Origin: Blastocladiella emersonii ATCC 22665
Lineage: Eukaryota; Fungi; Blastocladiomycota
Assembly: GCA_025594325.1 (NCBI GenBank)
Contig: JANHCV010000001.1
Location: 5,078,961-5,142,960, forward strand
Direction: 5' to 3'
Length of the DNA stretch: 64,000 nucleotides
Shown here piece by piece: positions 22,450 through 30,168 of the stretch. The stretch's first letter is position 1; every line of letters starts with the position of its first letter. The translations under genes were made by a program, and so were the position numbers. A model generated the notes under the pieces. It did no database searches and had not been told where the DNA came from. It saw nothing but the letters and a program-made list of their open reading frames with translations.

Positions 22450-24720
22450 ATGTATCCGCAACCGGCTCGACTGAGCCTGCTTGCGACACTCCTCGCAATC
22501 GCCGTCCTGGCGGCGCCAGCGGCCGATGCCTCAGTCCTGACCAAACGCGGCATCGCGGTCCCCGCGTCCGCCGACCATCACGTCGTGAGCGTGCGTGCGG
22601 TCCACCCGCGGACGGGACTCGCGCTCGCGACGCTGCAGAAGCGCGATGCAGCGACTGGCCGCGACCAGTACCGCGACAAGCTCGTCGTCCAGGTCTCGGG
22701 CGGGCCCGAGCCGATTGCGCTGGATCTCGAGGTACGGTAGTGATACCGCGATGAACGAGCGAGTTCCTGACACCGTCCGATCGACCGCGTAGTTGAACCG
22801 CGAGCTTCTCGGCCCGCAGTACCAGCACATTCTTGGCGACGCGCCATCGACGACCCCACCGCCCGACAACTGCTTCTACCGCGGAACGGTGCAGGGCCGC
22901 GCCGGGTCGTTGGTTGCGGTCAGCGCGTGCGAGGGCGACCTCCACGGCCTCGTCCAGGTCGATCCAACGACGCGGTACTCGATCCACGCGCTGTCGTCCG
23001 ACGGCGACACGACTGCCGGTACGACTCGTTCTGCGGCGGGTCTCTCCAAGCGCCACGTCCTAGTGCGCGACACGGGCCGGTCCGCGACGGGCGACCCCGA
23101 GGAGCCGCGCGTCGGGCACTGTCCGCAGTCGGACCCATCGTTCCACTCGCCGCGCGGCGACAGCCATTTCGACCGGCGTCACCTCGTCCCGGCGTCGTCG
23201 CTGCACCACGCGGATCCGCCCGCGTCGTCGTTCGTGCACCGCGCGGCGCCGCTGGTGGCGCTCATCAAGCGCGAGTACGCGGCGCGCAACAACAAGACGA
23301 TCGAGCTGATGCTGGCCAACGACTACCAGCGGTACCAGGCGTTCGGCAACGACACGGAGCTGACGGCGCTCGAGCTGGTCAACGTCGCCAACGTGCTGCT
23401 CACGAACGCGACGGGGATCCTCGCCGCGCCCTACAAGATCGCCGTCACGGTCGCTGGCCAGTACACGGCCACGTCGCCCAAGTGGGTGACGGGGAGCCCG
23501 AGTACCGTGGACGTCGGGACGCTGCTGCAGGAGTTTTGCCAGTGGCGCCAGTCGCAGCTCACGGCCGTCGCCAACGTGGGCAACTTTCTCCAGCTCAACG
23601 ACGCGGGCCACCTGCTGACGAACCGCACGCTGGTGTCGTCGGGCGTCTCGGCGGCCATCGACGGGTACTCGTACGTCGGCGGGATGTGCAAGGCGTCGTC
23701 GGCGTGCGGCGTCGACTACGCGCCGCGCACCATCAACCCGGCGTACCAGGGCACGGTCCTCGCGCATGAGCTGGGCCACAACCTCGGGTCCGGCCACGAC
23801 GGCTCGAATAACGCCTGCCCGAGTACCGGCTTCATCATGCAGCCCGCGGCGTGCTCCAACTGCGCCCAGCTCGCGACCACCTTCTCCAACTGCTCCAAGA
23901 GCGCCATCGAGTCGTTCTTCAACAGCGCCGACACGACGTGCCTCGACAACTCGCCGACTCTCTGCGGGTACGCTCCCCACCCTATCCCGCCCCAGCCATC
24001 GCGCGCTCTGACACTCGCTCGACGTGTAGCAACGGCATCGTCGACCCCGGAGAGCAGTGCGACAGCGGCGACCGGGTGAACGGGAGCGCGTGCTGCACCC
24101 GTTCGTGCACGCTCCGGTCGAACGCGGCGTGCGACGACAAGAACGGCGCGTGCTGCAAGAACTGCCAGCTGCTCGCCAAGGACACGGTGTGCCGCGCGCG
24201 GACCAACGACGCAGTCCGCTCCTCGTGCGACATCGCGGACGTGTGCACGGGCACGTCGCCCGCGTGCCCGGACCTGTCCGCGGCCAACGGCGCGACGTGT
24301 TTCGCGGACGTGCCCAAGAACAGCTCCAAGGGCTTCTGCAACAACGGGTGGTGCACGTCGCGCGCCAACGCGTGCGCCGCGTACGGGTACCCGTACAGCT
24401 CCGGGTGCGACAAGCCCGCGGGGGCGCAGGCGTGCACGCTGTTCTGCGCGGGACAGGACGGGAACGGGTGCGTCAGCTTCCAGTACAACGCCGCCGGGAC
24501 CAGCGTCATTGCGCCCGATTTCGGGCCGTGCCCGCTCGACGGCGGCAAGTCCGGGTACTGTCTCGCCGGGACGTGTGTCGCGGGATCGCAGGGACAGAAC
24601 GTCAACAGCACGTCGCCGAACGCGGGCGGGTCGCTCGTGTTTGGCGGCGGGAGCGAGGCTGCGCGGTGGATGGCCATGGCCATGGCCGCGGTTCCGCTAG
24701 TCCTCGCGGCGTGGCTCTGA
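22450..24720 (+). CDS. Secreted ADAM/reprolysin (M12B) metalloprotease with disintegrin domain and hydrophobic C-terminus (two introns, near 22733-22791 and 23969-24029)
   Basis: Signal peptide; prodomain CFYRGTV; HELGHNLGSGHD plus Met-turn FIMQP; CG|NGIVDPGEQCD and CDIADVCTGTSPACP disintegrin motifs. Confidence 0.93.
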
Positions 24721-24818: not shown

Positions 24819-25898
24819 CTACACGGCGGCAGCCGAATCGGCCGCCTTACCACCGTCCTGCTTCTTGGCAAACTCCTCGGCGAGCCGCGTCTGCTTGCGG
24901 TTGTACAGGAACAGCGCGGGCAGGGCCACGATCCAGTACAAGAAGTAGGTGATGGTGGTGACGAGCGTCCACTCGGACCGCCAGCCGAACAGCGCGCCGA
25001 TCAGCTGGAAGAACACGTTGCCCTCCTCGCCGTCAAACTCGCGGTCCTCGATCTCGAGAATCACGATCTCGCCGCCCGTCAGCTCCTCGACCTCGTGGCA
25101 GCCGCCCATGAACAGGCCGGCCGCGATGAAGAGGAGGAGGACCAGCGACACGTGCACGAACGCCTTGAGTGCGACCGTGTGGCCGCCCTTGTACACGAGC
25201 CAGCCGATCAGGCACCCAGTGATGATACCGGTGATGGCGGGCAGGATGATGGACTTGGCCGACGCCGACGACGAGGTACCGCCGAGCAGGACGAGCGTCT
25301 CGAGGCCCTCGCGCAGCACGACCGTGAACGAGAGCAGAAACATGGGCCACTTGTTCTTCTGCATCGTGGTCATGGCCTCCTCGGCCGCGTTGCGCAGCTT
25401 CTGCTCCCACTTGAGCTGCCAGTACTCGACCTTGACCATGGTGAAGGCCATGACCGTGATCAGCGCGCACGCCAGGAACTTGAAGAAGGCCTCGAACAGG
25501 ATCTCGAACGTCTCCGTGCCCCAGATGTCGACGCGCAGCGCCTGGAACAGGATGATGAACACGATCGCGAGCGCGATCGAGACGGCGGCACCCGCCGCGG
25601 CGCCGAGGTACACCTGGCGGATCATGAGCTTGCGCAGGTCGTCGTTGCTCGCCATGATGCGGTTGATGAACGTCACCAGCACCGCAATGATGACGGCCAT
25701 CTCGAGGACCTCGCGTGACTACCGAGCGATCGACGCGGCCGTCAGCTTGTTGAGCTCGTCGCTAACGACGTCGACGCGTCGCCAACCACGTACGAAGATG
25801 AAGTAAGCCGGCACATCGAACCAGCCCAACGAGCGGAATTTGGTCTCGACTTCACTGTCAGGCACACCGAACGTGCGCGTGATGCCACTGTCTGACAT
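24819..25898 (-). CDS. FTR1: High-affinity iron permease FTR1 (intron 25719-25793)
   Basis: Two RExxE motifs (spliced FIF|SREVLE and VLREGLET); multiple TM segments; FIAAGLF and ALFGW motifs. Confidence 0.95.
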
Positions 25899-26470
25899 GG
25901 TTGATGGTCGAGAGTAGTGTGAAGGAGGGTGAGGATGAGGATGAGCGGAAGACGACCAGAACGACGACGGGACGCGGGGCACTGCTTCACTTTGTAGAAA
26001 CCCTGGACTCGAGCGAGGACGGCGAACAACTCGACGAAAATGCCGCTATCGCAGTTGACTCGTCACGTACACCCGCATGACGTCGGCAGGCGCAAGCGAG
26101 GCGAAGATTATATCTGATGGCAGGCGGCGAAACGTTGCTGGTCCCTTGTGTGAACGGAGGTGTCCACGCCAGCAGTTCTTGCCGGGCACATGGCCTCGAT
26201 CCAAAGCGAGGCGCCGCCACCGCACACGAGTGCCAAGCATCGCGAGTGATCCGGGCGGCGCCACCCACGGTAAATCATGCAGACTTGATTGATCGATAAA
26301 GAGCAGAAACACAACGAGGGACTTTTCAGCTGCCTCCCGATCCTCGTCGTTGTCTTCTCGATTGGGAGCACTCGCCATCCTCTCCAAGGGTTCTCTCCGT
26401 GCCAGGGTTTGATAAAACAGCGGCGACCCCCGTCGTCGCGACCTCGACGCTGCCTCGAACATCTTTCACC

Positions 26471-27817
26471 ATGGCGCGGACACAAGTCTTCCTCTTCGCC
26501 GCCCTGCTCGCGGTGCTGCTGCAGTCGGTGTCCCCGGTCGCCGCGGCCGAGGCCGAGTCGACGCCGAACCCGTGCCCGCGCAACGACAAGTGCGCCATCT
26601 GGACCTACTACGTGGCCGCCGAGGAGGTCGAGTGGGACTACGCTCCCTCGGGCAAGGACGGGTTCTCGGGCGACTCGCTGACGACGGCCGGGTCCGACCC
26701 CGCCGTGTTCGCGGCGCAGGCCGAGGGCCGCATCGGCAAAAAGTACCTCAAGGCCGTGTACAAGCAGTATACGGACGACAAGTTCGAGAAGCAGGTCGCG
26801 CGGCGCGCCGAGGACGAGCACCTCGGCATCATGGGCCCCGTGCTGCGCGCCGAGGTCAACCAGGTGATCCGCGTCGTGTTCAAGAACAAGGCCAAGACGA
26901 ACCCGTACTCGATCCACCCGCACGGCGTCTTCTACGACAAGGACAACGAGGGCGCCGGCATGGGCCCCGACGCGGGCGCGGGCGCCTCGGTCGACCCCGG
27001 CAAGACGTTCACGTACACGTGGCCCGTGCCCAACCGCGCCGGTCCCGGCCCGAACGACGGCAGCGCCATGGTGTGGGCGTACCACTCGCACGTCATGGAG
27101 TCGGACATTTACGACGGCCTGTACGGCGCGCTCGTGGTCTACGAGTCGGGCATTCTGGGTGACAACGGGCTGCCCAAGTACGACTCGAGCTCGTTCCGCG
27201 TCAAGAAGGAGTTCTTTTTGTCGTTTGTCGTCGGCAACGAGAACGAGTCGTCGTTCCTCAAGGCCAACATTGCCAAGTACGCCAAGAACACGACGTACAC
27301 GCCCGAGGAGTTTGCGGCGCTCCCCGCCACCATCAAGTCCAACACGACGGCGCTGGCCGCGCTCGACACGTCGGACGCGTTCAAGGAGTCGAACATGATG
27401 CACAACATCAACGGCTACTTCTACGGCAACCTGCCGACGCTGCAGATGGACCTGGGCGACTACGTGCGGTTCTACCTGCTCGCGTTCGGGACCGAGGTCG
27501 ACATCCACACGATCCACTGGCACGGCATCACGGTCATGTCCGAGGGCCACCGCCGCGACGTGCTCGAGGCGTTCCCGGCGACGTTCCGGTGGGCCGATGC
27601 GCACGTCGACAACCCGGGCAACTGGCTGCTGCACTGCCACGTCCACGACCACTTCAAGGCCGGCATGTACATGTCGTTCAACGTGTCCAACCCCAAGGAG
27701 GTCAAGACCCTCAACGACATGATGGCCGCCACCGCCGCGCCATCGGCGCTCGGCTCGCGCAGCATCCTCGCGGCCGCTGGCGCCGCGGCCCTCGCCGTGT
27801 TTGTGCTAATTGCTTAA
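26471..27817 (+). CDS. Two-domain ceruloplasmin/hephaestin-like multicopper oxidase, signal peptide plus GPI-type tail, 448 aa
   Basis: Ceruloplasmin-type strings YYVAAEEVEWDYAP, RIGKKYLKAVYKQYTD, HLGIMGPVLRAEV, PYSIHPHG; copper ligands HPH and YHSH (domain 1), HTIHWHG and HCHVHDHFKAGM (domain 2). Confidence 0.92.
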   Translation: MARTQVFLFAALLAVLLQSVSPVAAAEAESTPNPCPRNDKCAIWTYYVAAEEVEWDYAPSGKDGFSGDSLTTAGSDPAVFAAQAEGRIGKKYLKAVYKQYTDDKFEKQVARRAEDEHLGIMGPVLRAEVNQVIRVVFKNKAKTNPYSIHPHGVFYDKDNEGAGMGPDAGAGASVDPGKTFTYTWPVPNRAGPGPNDGSAMVWAYHSHVMESDIYDGLYGALVVYESGILGDNGLPKYDSSSFRVKKEFFLSFVVGNENESSFLKANIAKYAKNTTYTPEEFAALPATIKSNTTALAALDTSDAFKESNMMHNINGYFYGNLPTLQMDLGDYVRFYLLAFGTEVDIHTIHWHGITVMSEGHRRDVLEAFPATFRWADAHVDNPGNWLLHCHVHDHFKAGMYMSFNVSNPKEVKTLNDMMAATAAPSALGSRSILAAAGAAALAVFVLIA

Positions 27818-28155: not shown

Positions 28156-30168
28156 ATGAACACTTCCGAGCCCAAGATGCGCGCACGGGCCATCAGCGTT
28201 GACGGGCCGCTGGACCACCGGCCGGGCGGCAGCAGCAGTGCGCCGAGTTCGCGCAACAGCGGTGGCGACACGGTGCTCGTCATGGCGGCGGGCGACGCGA
28301 GCAGCACGACGACGGCGTCCGATTCGCAGGCCAACCTGCTGCGCGGGTCCCCGTCCCCGTCTCCGCCCGCGACGGGCAACCTGCCGTGGAAGGACCGCCT
28401 GCACCGGCTCGTGCACGGGCCGACGCCGCCCATCGAGCTATCGCTCGGCCCGCCGTGGATGCCGCGGTTCGCCGGGTGGTTCTCCAACCTCGTCCCATCG
28501 CGGTGGCGCGGCGCGTACCTGACCTTCTACCACGTCGTGATGATCGCGTCGCTGCTAGTCTGGACGTACCTCGCCAACTACGCGGCCGTGACGTACACGG
28601 TCGATTCGCGGGGCGCGCGCGTGGCCGAGGTGCCCGCCGAGTACGGGTGCCGCGCTCAGCCGCTGCTCGCGTCCAAGTGCGGCGTGCTGGGGATCGACTG
28701 CCGGCCGTTCGCGACCCGCGCGTACACGGTGCGGTGTCCGGCAGACTGCGGGTCGGCGCGGTCGCTCAGCGCGTTCTACGTCGGTGGCGACGTCGCGTAC
28801 CTGGTCCCGCCCGTCATCGGCAACGGCGTGTACCGCGGCGACAGCTGGGCGTGCGTCGCGGGCGTGCATGCGGGCGTACTGCAGAGTGCGGCGGGCGGGT
28901 GCATGCGCGTGGTGCCGGGCGGCGAGGTCGCGGGGTTCGCGAGCGCGGAGCGCAACGGGATCACGTCGTTGGCGTTCAACGGGACGTACCCGGCATCGTT
29001 CCGCGTCGAGGCCGTCGCCGAGGGCGACCAGCAGTGGTGCGGGACGCCCGTCGGGCCAGCGACCGCGTACTTCTACGTCTTGCTGCCGTGGCTGCTGCTC
29101 GGCCACCCGAGCGCGGGCCACTGGGTCGTAGCGACGGCGTGCTACGTTTTCTACTTCGTGATCTTCCTCGGCGTCGACGCGCAGCGCAGCGACGATTTCA
29201 TCACAAGCGCGGTCGCGCAGCTGACCCCGTACGTGGCCGTGACGCTGGTGCTCGTGCGGCTCGTGTTCGCGCGGATCCTGCCGCGCCCGCTCGCCGCGTA
29301 CCCGGTCGAGACCCTGGGGCTCGTCCTCGCACCCGCGCTCGCGATGTTGTTCCTCGAGGTGATCCAGGGCGCGCTGCCGCCGTTCACGCTGACATCGGCG
29401 CTGTTCGCGTCGGCGTCGCGCGCCACGCTCGGGCTCGTGCTCCTCGCCGTCTTCCTCGTCGCCGCGTCGCTCCAGGGTCTGTCCCTGTACCGCACGGGCA
29501 CGCTGGCGCGGACGGCTCTCGAGTACACGGTCGGCTCGGTCCTCCTGTTCGCGGTCCCGCCGCTCCTCAGCCTGTCGCCGCACGTGCACCACTACATGGT
29601 GGGCATGTTCCTGATGCCGGCGCTCCGGTGGACACGGACGCGCACCGCGCTGGTCTTTCTCGGCGTGCTGTGGGGTCTGTTCATGCACGGGATCGCGCGG
29701 TGGGGGTTCGACTCGCCGCTAACCACCGCGCTCGCCGCGCGGCAGGCCGTCGGGCTGCTGGCGGGCACCCCGCGGCCCGTGTGGAACGCGACGGCGACGG
29801 CGGCCACGGATGACGGCGTGTCGCTCGCGTGGTCGCTGGCGATCCCGCGCGTCGACGGTGCGGGGAAGCGGATCGGCGGGAACCTCACAGACCTGGTCGG
29901 CGCAGGCGGGGAGGAGACGGCGGCGCGCGCGGGGATCGCCGCGTACGCCGTGTTCCTCAACGACGTCGAGGTGCAGCGCACGCTGCGCGCGTCCGTGACG
30001 CTCGCGGTGGATGCGGGCGCGGCGCGCGGCGGGATGATCGCGTGGACCGACCCGATGGCGGTGCGCGTGGTGCCGCGCCGCGGGGGCGCGATGCTGGATA
30101 GCGGGCCGGTCCTGCTCGTCTGGCGCAACGGGACGACCAAGGAGCTGCCTGCGTGGAAGCCGACGTGA
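28156..30168 (+). CDS. LCCL-domain multi-pass membrane protein
   Basis: LCCL motif YRGDSWACVAGVHAGVL...GGCMRV...RNGITS...SF followed by several TM helices and PHVHHY; intronless 670-aa ORF. Confidence 0.85.
   Translation: MNTSEPKMRARAISVDGPLDHRPGGSSSAPSSRNSGGDTVLVMAAGDASSTTTASDSQANLLRGSPSPSPPATGNLPWKDRLHRLVHGPTPPIELSLGPPWMPRFAGWFSNLVPSRWRGAYLTFYHVVMIASLLVWTYLANYAAVTYTVDSRGARVAEVPAEYGCRAQPLLASKCGVLGIDCRPFATRAYTVRCPADCGSARSLSAFYVGGDVAYLVPPVIGNGVYRGDSWACVAGVHAGVLQSAAGGCMRVVPGGEVAGFASAERNGITSLAFNGTYPASFRVEAVAEGDQQWCGTPVGPATAYFYVLLPWLLLGHPSAGHWVVATACYVFYFVIFLGVDAQRSDDFITSAVAQLTPYVAVTLVLVRLVFARILPRPLAAYPVETLGLVLAPALAMLFLEVIQGALPPFTLTSALFASASRATLGLVLLAVFLVAASLQGLSLYRTGTLARTALEYTVGSVLLFAVPPLLSLSPHVHHYMVGMFLMPALRWTRTRTALVFLGVLWGLFMHGIARWGFDSPLTTALAARQAVGLLAGTPRPVWNATATAATDDGVSLAWSLAIPRVDGAGKRIGGNLTDLVGAGGEETAARAGIAAYAVFLNDVEVQRTLRASVTLAVDAGAARGGMIAWTDPMAVRVVPRRGGAMLDSGPVLLVWRNGTTKELPAWKPT

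What the first reader, a model, noticed from the sequence alone, without database searches (positions are those of the whole stretch)
24819..27817. FTR1 paired head-to-head with a non-Fet3 oxidase: an alternative reductive iron-uptake module
Seen: FTR1 (minus strand) and the ceruloplasmin-like gene (plus strand) diverge from a 572-bp intergenic region. Established: fungal FTR1 genes are commonly divergently paired with three-domain Fet3 ferroxidases that bind Ftr1 through a TM anchor, while Chlamydomonas uses a six-domain ceruloplasmin-like FOX1. Inference: same genomic logic with a different oxidase, implying non-orthologous replacement or an ancestral pairing, and iron channelling from a probably GPI-linked trimer.
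Basis: partly seen in the sequence, partly recalled or inferred. Interest (0 to 1): 0.78.

Follow-up and report, generated by a model that had tools for sequence, protein, structure and literature searches.

The report
Iron permease paired with mini-ceruloplasmin oxidase
In the water fungus Blastocladiella emersonii an FTR1 iron-permease gene sits head-to-head with a one-third-size, ceruloplasmin-type copper oxidase that very probably replaces the usual fungal Fet3; in some chytrid fungi the two are fused into one protein, which is a natural handle for studying how oxidised iron passes from oxidase to transporter.

Summary
FTR1 (minus strand, two exons, 334 aa) and a 448-aa two-cupredoxin-domain oxidase of the ceruloplasmin/hephaestin family (plus strand) diverge from a 572-bp spacer (25899-26470).

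- **Oxidase:** it keeps every type-1 and trinuclear copper ligand and all four ceruloplasmin Fe(II)-site residues. It has a signal peptide and a GPI-signal-like tail.
- **Genome:** these two-domain oxidases are its only multicopper oxidases. There are two copies, each head-to-head with an FTR1, and no Fet3-type gene.
- **Conservation:** the pairing recurs in Catenaria, B. britannica and the chytrid Quaeritorhiza.
- **Fusion:** in Nowakowskiella, Cladochytrium and Hyaloraphidium the oxidase is fused into FTR1, between TM6 and TM7. This is extracellular loop 6, the loop that contacts Fet3 in yeast.
- **Predicted binding:** a complex prediction passed (0.69 against a best control of 0.00). The contact is an FTR1 N-terminal tail found only in oxidase-paired FTR1s.
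- **Promoters:** several carry the SreA/Fep1-type ATCWGATAA site.
- **Phylogeny:** fungal two-domain oxidases are sister to the animal ceruloplasmin/hephaestin repeats (100/97).
- **Bacteria:** bacterial homologues are not linked to FTR1.

Best reading: a trimeric, surface-tethered ferroxidase feeding FTR1, confidence about 0.8. Expression, trimer, anchor and activity remain untested. The scan had already noted the paralogous locus (s1-076305) with the same reading.

The parts
24819..25718 (-). FTR1 exon 2 (residues 36-334 plus stop). Contains REVLE (25701-25715), REGLE (25299-25313) and the loop-6 acidic motif HEVEE (25083-25097).
   Evidence: Pfam PF03239 at E 1.2e-36. Coordinates and motifs checked by translation. 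Seven hydrophobic segments found. Identical to deposited protein P0121.
25719..25793 (-). FTR1 intron, 75 nt, GTACGT donor and TAG acceptor, phase 0.
   Evidence: The splice reproduces P0121.
25794..25898 (-). FTR1 exon 1 (residues 1-35). Residues 2-14 (25857-25895) form an extracellular N-terminal tail that is the predicted oxidase-docking strand.
   Evidence: Predicted interface. The tail is conserved only in oxidase-paired FTR1s.
25899..26470 (.). Shared 572-bp divergent promoter region.
   Evidence: It cannot be aligned with the paralogue's 432-bp spacer except for short motifs.
26111..26118 (-). ATCAGATA(T): an 8-of-9 match to the SreA/Fep1-type iron GATA-repressor site ATCWGATAA.
   Evidence: Only match in the 64-kb window. 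Exact 9-mers stand in the paralogue's promoter and upstream of the Catenaria, Allomyces and Paraphysoderma oxidase genes. Consensus taken from PMC2610380.
26410..26415 (+). TGATAA, a simple GATA site 56 bp upstream of the oxidase ATG.
   Evidence: On its own it is not significant against shuffles (P about 0.24).
26471..27817 (+). Two-domain ceruloplasmin-type multicopper oxidase, 448 aa, single exon.
26471..26542 (+). Signal-peptide-like N-terminus (residues 1-24).
   Evidence: Hydrophobic segment at residues 6-24. Sequence read. Inference only; no predictor was run.
26564..26611 (+). Fungus-specific N-terminal Cys motif and first strand (residues 32-47), the predicted contact with the FTR1 tail.
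   Evidence: interface residues 32-35 and 38-47. Alignment A1.
26603..27166 (+). Cupredoxin domain 1. Carries the trinuclear-cluster ligands H149/H151 (26915-26923) and H205/H207 (27083-27091). No type-1 Cys.
27203..27691 (+). Cupredoxin domain 2. Type-1 site: H346, C389, H394, M399. Trinuclear ligands: H349, H351, H388, H390. Fe(II)-site residues: E306, H311, D393, plus E342 for the neighbouring site.
   Evidence: Residue-by-residue alignment to human ceruloplasmin 1KCW. Residue roles from PMC3738974. Invariance. Coordinates.
27731..27814 (+). C-terminal tail: small residues followed by a 17-residue hydrophobic stretch that runs to the last residue (GPI-signal-like).
   Evidence: Such tails are present in the fungal homologues and absent from the bacterial ones. 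The anchor type is inferred.

Best explanation
The two genes encode the two halves of a high-affinity, oxidase-dependent iron-uptake machine. In it a two-domain, ceruloplasmin-type ferroxidase does the job that Fet3 does in yeasts.

Proposed mechanism:
1. Cell-surface reductases produce Fe(II).
2. The secreted, membrane-tethered oxidase assembles as a homotrimer. This gives three type-1 coppers, three inter-subunit trinuclear clusters and three composite Fe(II) sites (E306/H311/D393 from one subunit, E342 from its neighbour).
3. The trimer oxidises Fe(II) to Fe(III), reducing O2 to water.
4. Fe(III) passes directly to the acidic loop 6 and the REXLE channel of the seven-helix FTR1 permease.

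The oxidase is held on FTR1 at least partly by FTR1's extracellular N-terminal tail. Both genes are driven from the shared promoter, probably under an iron-responsive GATA repressor.

Shown here: gene structures, ligand sets, absence of Fet3, conserved synteny, natural fusions, and a passed in-silico binding test.

Inferred: ferroxidase activity, trimer, GPI anchor, plasma-membrane location, iron regulation, and a 3:3 stoichiometry.
For: 1. All copper ligands and all four ceruloplasmin Fe(II)-site residues are present (roles from PMC3738974). E306, H311 and D393 are invariant in the seven aligned fungal homologues, while many bacterial homologues lack them.
2. FTR1 keeps both REXLE motifs, seven hydrophobic helices and an EXXE motif in loop 6.
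3. The genome's only multicopper oxidase genes are this one and a paralogue. Both are head-to-head with an FTR1. PF00394 gives no hit and PF07732 gives only these two.
4. The same head-to-head pair occurs in Catenaria, B. britannica and Quaeritorhiza.
5. Rosetta-stone fusions exist in three genera and in metagenome proteins: Nowakowskiella (P0151, P0163), Cladochytrium (P0207), Hyaloraphidium (P0186) and P0228, P0250, P0279. In them FTR1 TM1-6 is followed by the two-domain oxidase. Where the model reaches that far (P0163, P0207) TM7 follows; the P0186 model ends just before it. In Nowakowskiella the FTR1-to-oxidase junction lies inside one uninterrupted ORF.
6. The insertion point is extracellular loop 6, just after the HEFEE motif. 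In yeast this is the loop that contacts Fet3 and takes part in channelling (PMC11817551).
7. Complex prediction gave a score of 0.69 against a best control of 0.00. That mark was reached by 51 of 78 solved complexes and 2 of 108 mismatched pairs. Runs agree in at least 72% of contacts and partner pLDDT is at least 85.
8. The contacting FTR1 tail (residues 2-14) is conserved in all four oxidase-paired blastoclad FTR1s. It is missing in the unpaired paralogue and in the fusions.
9. Exact ATCWGATAA sites or an 8-of-9 variant stand in 5 of 7 oxidase upstream regions. Only 25 exact sites exist in the whole 32.65-Mb genome. The same motif is bound in the S. pombe fio1-fip1 pair (PMC2610380).
10. FRE-type reductase genes are present in the genome.
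Against: - There is no expression or biochemical data. No RNA run was listed.
- The adjacency is absent in Allomyces, Paraphysoderma, Syncephalis and Endogone.
- A third FTR1 in this genome is unpaired.
- The complex prediction is a 1:1 model of what should be a trimer. It was made without alignments, and its interface is a strand added by a flexible tail.
- The promoter motif in this window is only 8 of 9. B. britannica and Quaeritorhiza lack it. Three other genomic sites of the exact motif lie near no obvious iron gene.
- An SreA-type regulator was not identified.
- Related bacterial two-domain oxidases carry automatic labels such as 'manganese oxidase', so substrate cannot be read from family alone.
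Confidence: 0.8

Rival explanations
1. The pair works inside the cell (vacuole or endosome), like yeast Fet5-Fth1. It would mobilise stored iron rather than import it at the plasma membrane.
For: The genome has three FTR1 genes and two oxidase genes, so some division of labour is likely. Nothing tested here fixes the compartment.
Against: A terminal GPI-signal-like tail with no cytosolic residues points to the cell surface. Both paired copies share the same tail and the same FTR1 docking tail.
Confidence: 0.1
2. The oxidase has another main substrate, such as Cu(I), Mn(II), phenols or amines. Its neighbourhood with FTR1 would then reflect shared metal regulation, not a physical complex.
For: Ceruloplasmin itself oxidises amines and Cu(I) (PMC3738974). 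Bacterial relatives carry automatic 'manganese oxidase' labels. Four fungi keep the oxidase without an adjacent FTR1.
Against: The complete ceruloplasmin Fe(II) site is conserved in fungal members and often lost in bacterial ones. Covalent fusions put the oxidase into FTR1 loop 6 in three genera. The binding test passed.
Confidence: 0.07
3. The module was recently captured from bacteria, where two-domain oxidases of this family abound, and says nothing about ancestral eukaryotic iron uptake.
For: Hundreds of bacterial two-domain homologues are 41-49% identical. A two-domain ceruloplasmin homologue in Fusarium has been read as horizontally transferred (PMC6994591).
Against: Fungal sequences form one clade that is sister to the animal ceruloplasmin/hephaestin repeats (96/95 and 100/97). 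The genes sit in eukaryotic contexts, some with introns. None of 80 bacterial oxidase loci has an FTR1 within 8 kb, and in 30 of those genomes no FTR1 locus overlaps an oxidase locus.
Confidence: 0.03

Closest known systems
Fet3p-Ftr1p of S. cerevisiae; fio1-fip1 of S. pombe; FTR1/oxidase pairs of Mucorales
   Same: A multicopper ferroxidase plus an FTR1 permease with REXLE motifs. The genes are often a divergent pair on one promoter (PMC4133162). The S. pombe pair is bound by an iron GATA repressor at ATCWGATAA-type sites (PMC2610380). Fe(III) is channelled through extracellular loop 6 (PMC11817551).
   Different: Fet3 is a three-domain monomer with its own transmembrane helix and cytosolic tail. 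Its Fe site is E185/D283/D409. Here the oxidase has two domains, ceruloplasmin-type Fe ligands, no PF00394 domain and a GPI-signal-like end. It must oligomerise to form its trinuclear clusters.
Animal ceruloplasmin, hephaestin and zyklopen
   Same: Same sequence family, with each repeat scoring 176-245 bits. Identical copper and Fe(II)-site residues. A GPI-linked ceruloplasmin form is known (abstract of PMC6712297, listed). Sister groups in the tree.
   Different: The animal proteins are six domains in one chain with a single trinuclear cluster. They serve iron export with ferroportin, and animals have no FTR1. Here there is one two-domain unit, a complete ligand set in every unit, and an import permease as partner.
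Chlamydomonas FOX1 with FTR1 (recalled from my own knowledge; not re-examined here)
   Same: A ceruloplasmin-like oxidase working with an FTR1 permease in a eukaryote outside the Fet3 world.
   Different: FOX1 is a six-domain single chain. No gene adjacency or fusion was examined here.
Bacterial and archaeal two-domain multicopper oxidases (SLAC small laccase; Nitrosomonas blue copper oxidase)
   Same: Two cupredoxin domains. They are active only as homotrimers with inter-subunit trinuclear clusters (PMC3738974). The closest bacterial members are 41-49% identical.
   Different: No C-terminal membrane tail. Many lack the Fe(II)-site residues. None of 80 loci is next to FTR1.
Fusarium oxysporum FOYG_17127, a two-domain ceruloplasmin homologue
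   Same: A fungal two-domain ceruloplasmin homologue modelled as a trimer (PMC6994591).
   Different: It was described as a horizontally acquired gene on a lineage-specific chromosome of a few ascomycetes. The passages read mention no FTR1 partner.

Membership tests
FTR1 iron permease family (PF03239) | Profile match above the curated cut-off | tested here: met
   126.9 bits for exon 2 and 138.1 bits for P0121, against a cut-off of 25.3.
FTR1 iron permease family (PF03239) | Two REXLE motifs, in TM1 and TM4 | tested here: met
   REVLE at residues 37-41 and REGLE at residues 171-175.
FTR1 iron permease family (PF03239) | Seven transmembrane helices and an acidic DXXE-type motif in extracellular loop 6 | tested here: met
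   Seven hydrophobic segments by hydropathy scan. HEVEE (E244-x-x-E247) follows TM6. Orientation is taken from yeast Ftr1 (PMC11817551).
FTR1 iron permease family (PF03239) | Fe(III) transport dependent on a ferroxidase | not testable with these tools
   Needs uptake assays.
Multicopper oxidase, ceruloplasmin/hephaestin clade | Type-1 site His-Cys-His-Met and eight His of the trinuclear cluster | tested here: met
   Type-1 site: H346, C389, H394, M399. Trinuclear His: H149, H151, H205, H207, H349, H351, H388, H390. All are invariant in 21 sequences.
Multicopper oxidase, ceruloplasmin/hephaestin clade | Ceruloplasmin-type Fe(II) site (E935, H940, D1025, plus E272/E971 from the neighbouring unit) | tested here: met
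   E306, H311, D393 and E342 align to these residues of 1KCW. Roles are from PMC3738974.
Multicopper oxidase, ceruloplasmin/hephaestin clade | Six cupredoxin domains in one chain | tested here: not met
   448 aa with one Cu-oxidase_3 and one Cu-oxidase_2 domain. The protein aligns to each single repeat of ceruloplasmin. It is a relative of the family, not a ceruloplasmin.
Two-domain multicopper oxidase with type-1 copper in the C-terminal domain | Two cupredoxin domains; type-1 ligands only in domain 2; trinuclear ligands split between the two domains | tested here: met
   Domain 1 has HPH and HSH but no Cys ligand.
Two-domain multicopper oxidase with type-1 copper in the C-terminal domain | Homotrimer | not tested
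   Inferred from ligand placement and from PMC3738974.
Fet3-type fungal ferroxidase | Three domains including a PF00394 middle domain; C-terminal transmembrane helix with a cytosolic tail | tested here: not met
   No PF00394 hit in this protein or anywhere in the genome. The tail ends with the hydrophobic stretch.
Regulon of SreA/Fep1-type iron GATA repressors | ATCWGATAA site in the promoter and an iron-sensing two-finger GATA factor | tested here: inconclusive
   8 of 9 in this promoter, and 9 of 9 in the paralogue and three orthologous upstream regions. A two-finger GATA gene exists, but no Cys-rich iron-sensing region was recognised.

The most novel reading that the evidence does not exclude
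FTR1 and a trimeric two-domain ceruloplasmin-type ferroxidase form an obligate 3:3 complex, and this was the original iron-uptake machine of fungi and perhaps of the common ancestor of fungi and animals. Under this reading animals kept the oxidase, triplicated it into ceruloplasmin/hephaestin and lost FTR1. Mucorales and Dikarya swapped the oxidase for Fet3. One chytrid lineage welded the oxidase into FTR1 loop 6, which preserves the Fe(III) hand-over geometry in a single polypeptide.
Probability: 0.35. Interest if true: 0.85.

Novelty: new variant of a known kind. Interest (0 to 1): 0.75.

Why it matters
- **An open structural problem.** According to a 2025 review, the ferroxidase-permease complex of fungi has never been purified or solved, and its stoichiometry and hand-over path are unknown (PMC11817551). 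A second, independent oxidase architecture on the same permease shows which features of the partnership are essential. Natural single-chain fusions of oxidase and permease add a ready-made object for cryo-EM.
- **The origin of ceruloplasmin.** The long-postulated two-domain precursor now has living eukaryotic relatives that are sister to the animal proteins. A 2013 survey still stated that eukaryotes have only three- or six-domain forms (PMC3600357).
- **Fungal iron biology.** Fet3 is not universal in fungi. Iron uptake in blastoclads and chytrids, which include parasites of algae, nematodes and amphibians, may rest on a different oxidase.

Tried and rejected
- **Expression.** The look-up of sequencing runs listed no RNA run. 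Co-expression and the intron could not be checked with reads.
- **FTR1 word search.** The search with FTR1 exon 2 returned only six proteins, so no broad FTR1 tree was made.
- **Synteny gaps.** Allomyces, Paraphysoderma, Syncephalis, Endogone and an unnamed metagenomic FTR1 (P0126) show no adjacency.
- **Bacterial operon origin, rejected.** No FTR1 lies within 8 kb of 80 bacterial or archaeal oxidase loci. My FTR1 profile did recognise 18 bacterial FTR1 reading frames as a control. No FTR1 locus of 30 of those genomes overlaps an oxidase locus.
- **Plain GATA counts.** WGATAA, HGATAR, CCAAT and an Aft1-like motif are not, or only weakly, above shuffles in the 572-bp spacer.
- **Other genomic ATCWGATAA sites.** Three sites (contigs 5, 11 and 16) lie near LRR, TOG, RhoGEF and E2 genes, not near recognisable iron genes.
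- **SreA-like regulator.** A two-finger GATA gene was found, without a recognisable Cys-rich region.
- **Tree limits.** Salpingoeca and Soliformovum two-domain oxidases fall outside the fungus-animal clade, and two stramenopile sequences fall inside the fungal part. Simple vertical descent through all eukaryotes is therefore not shown.
- **Spliced model.** Exon 2 was searched by reference, and the deposited full-length protein returned by that search (P0121) was used afterwards.
Full report
**Observation.** The window is the last 64 kb of a 5.14-Mb contig of Blastocladiella emersonii ATCC 22665. The organism name comes from the sources of the protein hits. On the minus strand an ORF at 24819-25700 matches Pfam FTR1 at E 1.2e-36. 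The profile match begins at position 16, so the start of the protein had to lie upstream. Translation of the upstream DNA shows an ATG at 25898 and 35 codons, followed by a 75-nt intron with a GTACGT donor and a TAG acceptor. The frame then resumes with SREVLE. The resulting 334-aa product is identical to the deposited protein P0121. On the plus strand the oxidase starts at 26471 and stops at 27817 (448 aa, one exon).

**The oxidase.** Pfam finds one Cu-oxidase_3 and one Cu-oxidase_2 domain and no middle Cu-oxidase domain. Against solved structures the best matches are rat and human ceruloplasmin at E about 1e-190. Each of the three ceruloplasmin repeats aligns to the whole mature protein at 176-245 bits. 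The gene is therefore one third of a ceruloplasmin.

- Aligned residue by residue to human ceruloplasmin 1KCW, it keeps the type-1 ligands H346, C389, H394 and M399.
- It keeps the eight trinuclear-cluster histidines: H149, H151, H205, H207, H349, H351, H388 and H390.
- It keeps the four residues of the ceruloplasmin Fe(II) site. E306, H311 and D393 correspond to E935, H940 and D1025. E342 corresponds to E971/E272, the glutamate that a neighbouring unit contributes (roles from PMC3738974).
- The copper ligands are invariant in 21 aligned fungal and bacterial homologues.
- The Fe-site residues E306, H311 and D393 are invariant in the seven aligned fungal members but replaced in many bacterial ones.

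In ceruloplasmin the trinuclear cluster lies between domains 1 and 6, which belong to different repeat units. A single two-domain chain can therefore build its cluster, and its composite Fe site, only with a neighbouring chain. Two-domain oxidases are active only as homotrimers (PMC3738974). I infer a homotrimer and did not test it.

The protein begins with a signal-peptide-like segment. It ends in small residues followed by 17 hydrophobic residues up to the last codon. Such tails are present in the fungal homologues and absent in the bacterial ones; Paraphysoderma instead has a helix followed by a short charged tail. That is the pattern of a GPI signal, but no predictor was available.

**Genome inventory.** Six-frame Pfam searches of the whole 32.65-Mb assembly find Cu-oxidase_3 and Cu-oxidase_2 only in this gene and in one paralogue 118 kb away. 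They find no Cu-oxidase (PF00394) domain at all. There is thus no Fet3-type or laccase-type gene. FTR1 occurs three times: here, next to the paralogous oxidase (again head-to-head, 432-bp spacer), and alone on contig 16. Genes with FRE-type reductase domains are present elsewhere.

The two oxidase copies are 100% identical from nucleotide 26 to 1331 of the coding sequence. The neighbouring FTR1 copies have diverged to dS 0.43 and dN 0.11, and the spacers do not align. This is the signature of recent gene conversion confined to the oxidase.

**Conservation of the pairing.** The same FTR1(-)/oxidase(+) head-to-head arrangement is found in Catenaria anguillulae, Blastocladiella britannica and the chytrid Quaeritorhiza haematococci. 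It is not found around the oxidase genes of Allomyces, Paraphysoderma, Syncephalis (two oxidases head-to-head) or Endogone.

**Fusions.** A profile search with the fungal oxidases brought up a Nowakowskiella protein carrying both FTR1 and oxidase domains.

- On two Nowakowskiella contigs, FTR1 helices 1-6, the two-domain oxidase and, on the contig that reaches far enough (L131), the last FTR1 helix lie on one strand in that order.
- The FTR1-to-oxidase junction lies inside a single uninterrupted ORF on both contigs, so it is not an artefact of gene modelling.
- An exhaustive search with P0151 found further fusions: Hyaloraphidium curvatum (781 aa, with RETLE, REGLE and all copper motifs), Cladochytrium replicatum (oxidase followed by TM7 and a cytosolic tail), and three metagenomic clusters.
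- In the tree the oxidase parts of the fusions form one clade (98/95), which suggests one fusion event.
- Hydropathy shows six helices before the insert. With the N-out orientation established for yeast Ftr1, this puts the oxidase outside the cell in extracellular loop 6, directly after the conserved HEFEE motif.
- In yeast, loop 6 with its DASE motif is the element that interacts with Fet3 and takes part in Fe(III) channelling (PMC11817551).

A fusion of this kind is strong evidence that the two separate proteins of B. emersonii act as one machine. Because the oxidase must trimerise, it also suggests a 3:3 assembly.

**Binding test.** Complex prediction with P0121 and oxidase residues 25-415 gave a score of 0.69 against a best control of 0.00. 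That mark was reached by 51 of 78 solved complexes and 2 of 108 mismatched pairs. Runs agree in at least 72% of contacts, and partner pLDDT is at least 85. The model supports binding and does not show it.

The confident contacts are FTR1 residues 2-14 against oxidase residues 32-47, 99-110, 132 and 231-233. An independent check supports the interface. This N-terminal tail is nearly identical in both paired B. emersonii FTR1s and in Catenaria, and recognisable in B. britannica. It is absent from the unpaired third FTR1 and from the fusion proteins, which do not need it. The tail is extracellular by the yeast topology, so the contact is topologically possible. According to the 2025 review no ferroxidase-permease complex has been solved, so a pass from memory is unlikely.

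**Promoter.** Plain GATA counts are unremarkable. The extended site ATCWGATA, however, occurs once in the 64-kb window, and that occurrence is in the spacer (26111-26118). The exact 9-mer ATCWGATAA occurs only 25 times in the genome, and one of those is in the paralogue's spacer. It also stands twice in the Catenaria spacer and upstream of the Allomyces and Paraphysoderma oxidase genes. No exact copy lies elsewhere in the window and the eight related fungal loci scanned (about 160 kb).

This is the extended consensus of the iron-responsive GATA repressors. It fits the sites bound in vivo in the S. pombe fio1-fip1 ferroxidase-permease pair (PMC2610380). It is suggestive of iron control. Its limits are that B. 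britannica and Quaeritorhiza lack it, other genomic sites are not near obvious iron genes, and no SreA-type factor was recognised.

**Origin.** Hundreds of bacterial two-domain proteins are 41-49% identical, but none of 80 such loci has an FTR1 within 8 kb. In 30 of those genomes the FTR1 genes lie elsewhere. In maximum-likelihood trees all fungal two-domain oxidases group together and are sister to the animal ceruloplasmin/hephaestin repeat units. Support was 96/95, then 100/97 with more eukaryotes. All animal units, including a coral one, are on the animal side.

Two stramenopile algal sequences nest within the fungal part, and choanoflagellate and amoebozoan two-domain oxidases fall outside. 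The history among eukaryotes is therefore not simply vertical. Still, the pairing with FTR1 looks like a eukaryotic, probably early fungal, invention and not an inherited operon.

**Mechanism proposed.** Reductases supply Fe(II). A surface-tethered homotrimer of the oxidase binds Fe(II) at three inter-subunit sites and passes electrons through the type-1 copper to the trinuclear cluster and O2. It then releases Fe(III) next to the acidic loop 6 and the REXLE channel of FTR1, on which it is held by the FTR1 N-terminal tail.

**Comparison and novelty.** The system works like Fet3-Ftr1, but the oxidase fails the defining features of Fet3. It belongs to the ceruloplasmin family without having the six-domain architecture. 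A two-domain ceruloplasmin homologue has been described in Fusarium as a horizontally acquired gene (PMC6994591), and a 2013 survey held that eukaryotes have only three- or six-domain forms (PMC3600357). Full-text searches for this pairing or fusion in chytrids or blastoclads found nothing. The scan itself had already flagged the paralogous locus with the same reading (s1-076305). I class it as a new variant of a known kind of system.

**Limits.** There is no expression, activity, oligomer or localisation data. The assemblies of Nowakowskiella are fragmentary, and the fusion models of Hyaloraphidium and Cladochytrium are truncated at one end. The tree lacks FOX1 and many protists.

Noticed in passing
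window 26496-27801 versus G000:C1:4984889-4986232 (L013 1890-3233): The two oxidase paralogues are 100% identical over nucleotides 26-1331 of the coding sequence. The adjacent FTR1 paralogues have dS 0.43, and the spacers do not align. This indicates a recent gene-conversion tract limited to the oxidase, between inverted copies 118 kb apart.
   Followed up: partly
L131 1621-4034 (Nowakowskiella P0163): One of the Nowakowskiella FTR1::oxidase fusions has lost both REXLE motifs and no longer scores with the FTR1 profile, while its oxidase part keeps all copper ligands. It may be an oxidase that now uses a dead permease only as an anchor. A tail of another fusion gene lies upstream on the same contig, so the copies are in tandem.
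   Followed up: partly
L017 4014-7530 (Syncephalis fuscata): Two two-domain oxidase genes sit head-to-head with no FTR1 nearby. The Syncephalis protein lacks the glutamate equivalent to E342.
   Followed up: no
P0256, P0276 (Tribonema minus, Phaeothamnion confervicola): Two-domain ceruloplasmin-type oxidases of stramenopile algae nest inside the fungal clade in the tree. This may reflect transfer between eukaryotes or an older distribution.
   Followed up: no
P0316 (Salpingoeca rosetta, 599 aa); P0292 (Soliformovum irregulare, 537 aa): A choanoflagellate and an amoebozoan also have single two-domain units of this family, with extra N-terminal regions. They fall outside the fungus-animal clade with weak support.
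   Followed up: no
P0163, P0186, P0207, P0126: A conserved CC-S-E-(E/N)-S-N motif lies in loop 6 just before the last FTR1 helix in the fusion proteins. A related CC-D-P-N motif is in an unfused metagenomic FTR1. The blastoclad FTR1s lack it.
   Followed up: no
window 22450-24720 (+): An ADAM-like gene (reprolysin metalloprotease plus disintegrin domain, apparently in two reading frames joined by an intron or frameshift) ends about 100 bp from the FTR1 stop codon.
   Followed up: no
window 28156-30168 (+): A 670-aa ORF encoding an LCCL domain followed by a long hydrophobic region lies downstream of the oxidase. It is not conserved next to the pair in other species.
   Followed up: no
G000:C1:2119151-2119927 (L132): A GATA factor gene with two zinc fingers about 225 residues apart. 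It is a possible iron regulator, but no Cys-rich region of the SreA/Fep1 type was recognised.
   Followed up: partly
G000:C16:357410-358204 (L012 1273-2306): The third FTR1 of the genome keeps both REXLE motifs but lacks the N-terminal docking tail and has no oxidase neighbour. Its partner, if any, is unknown.
   Followed up: partly
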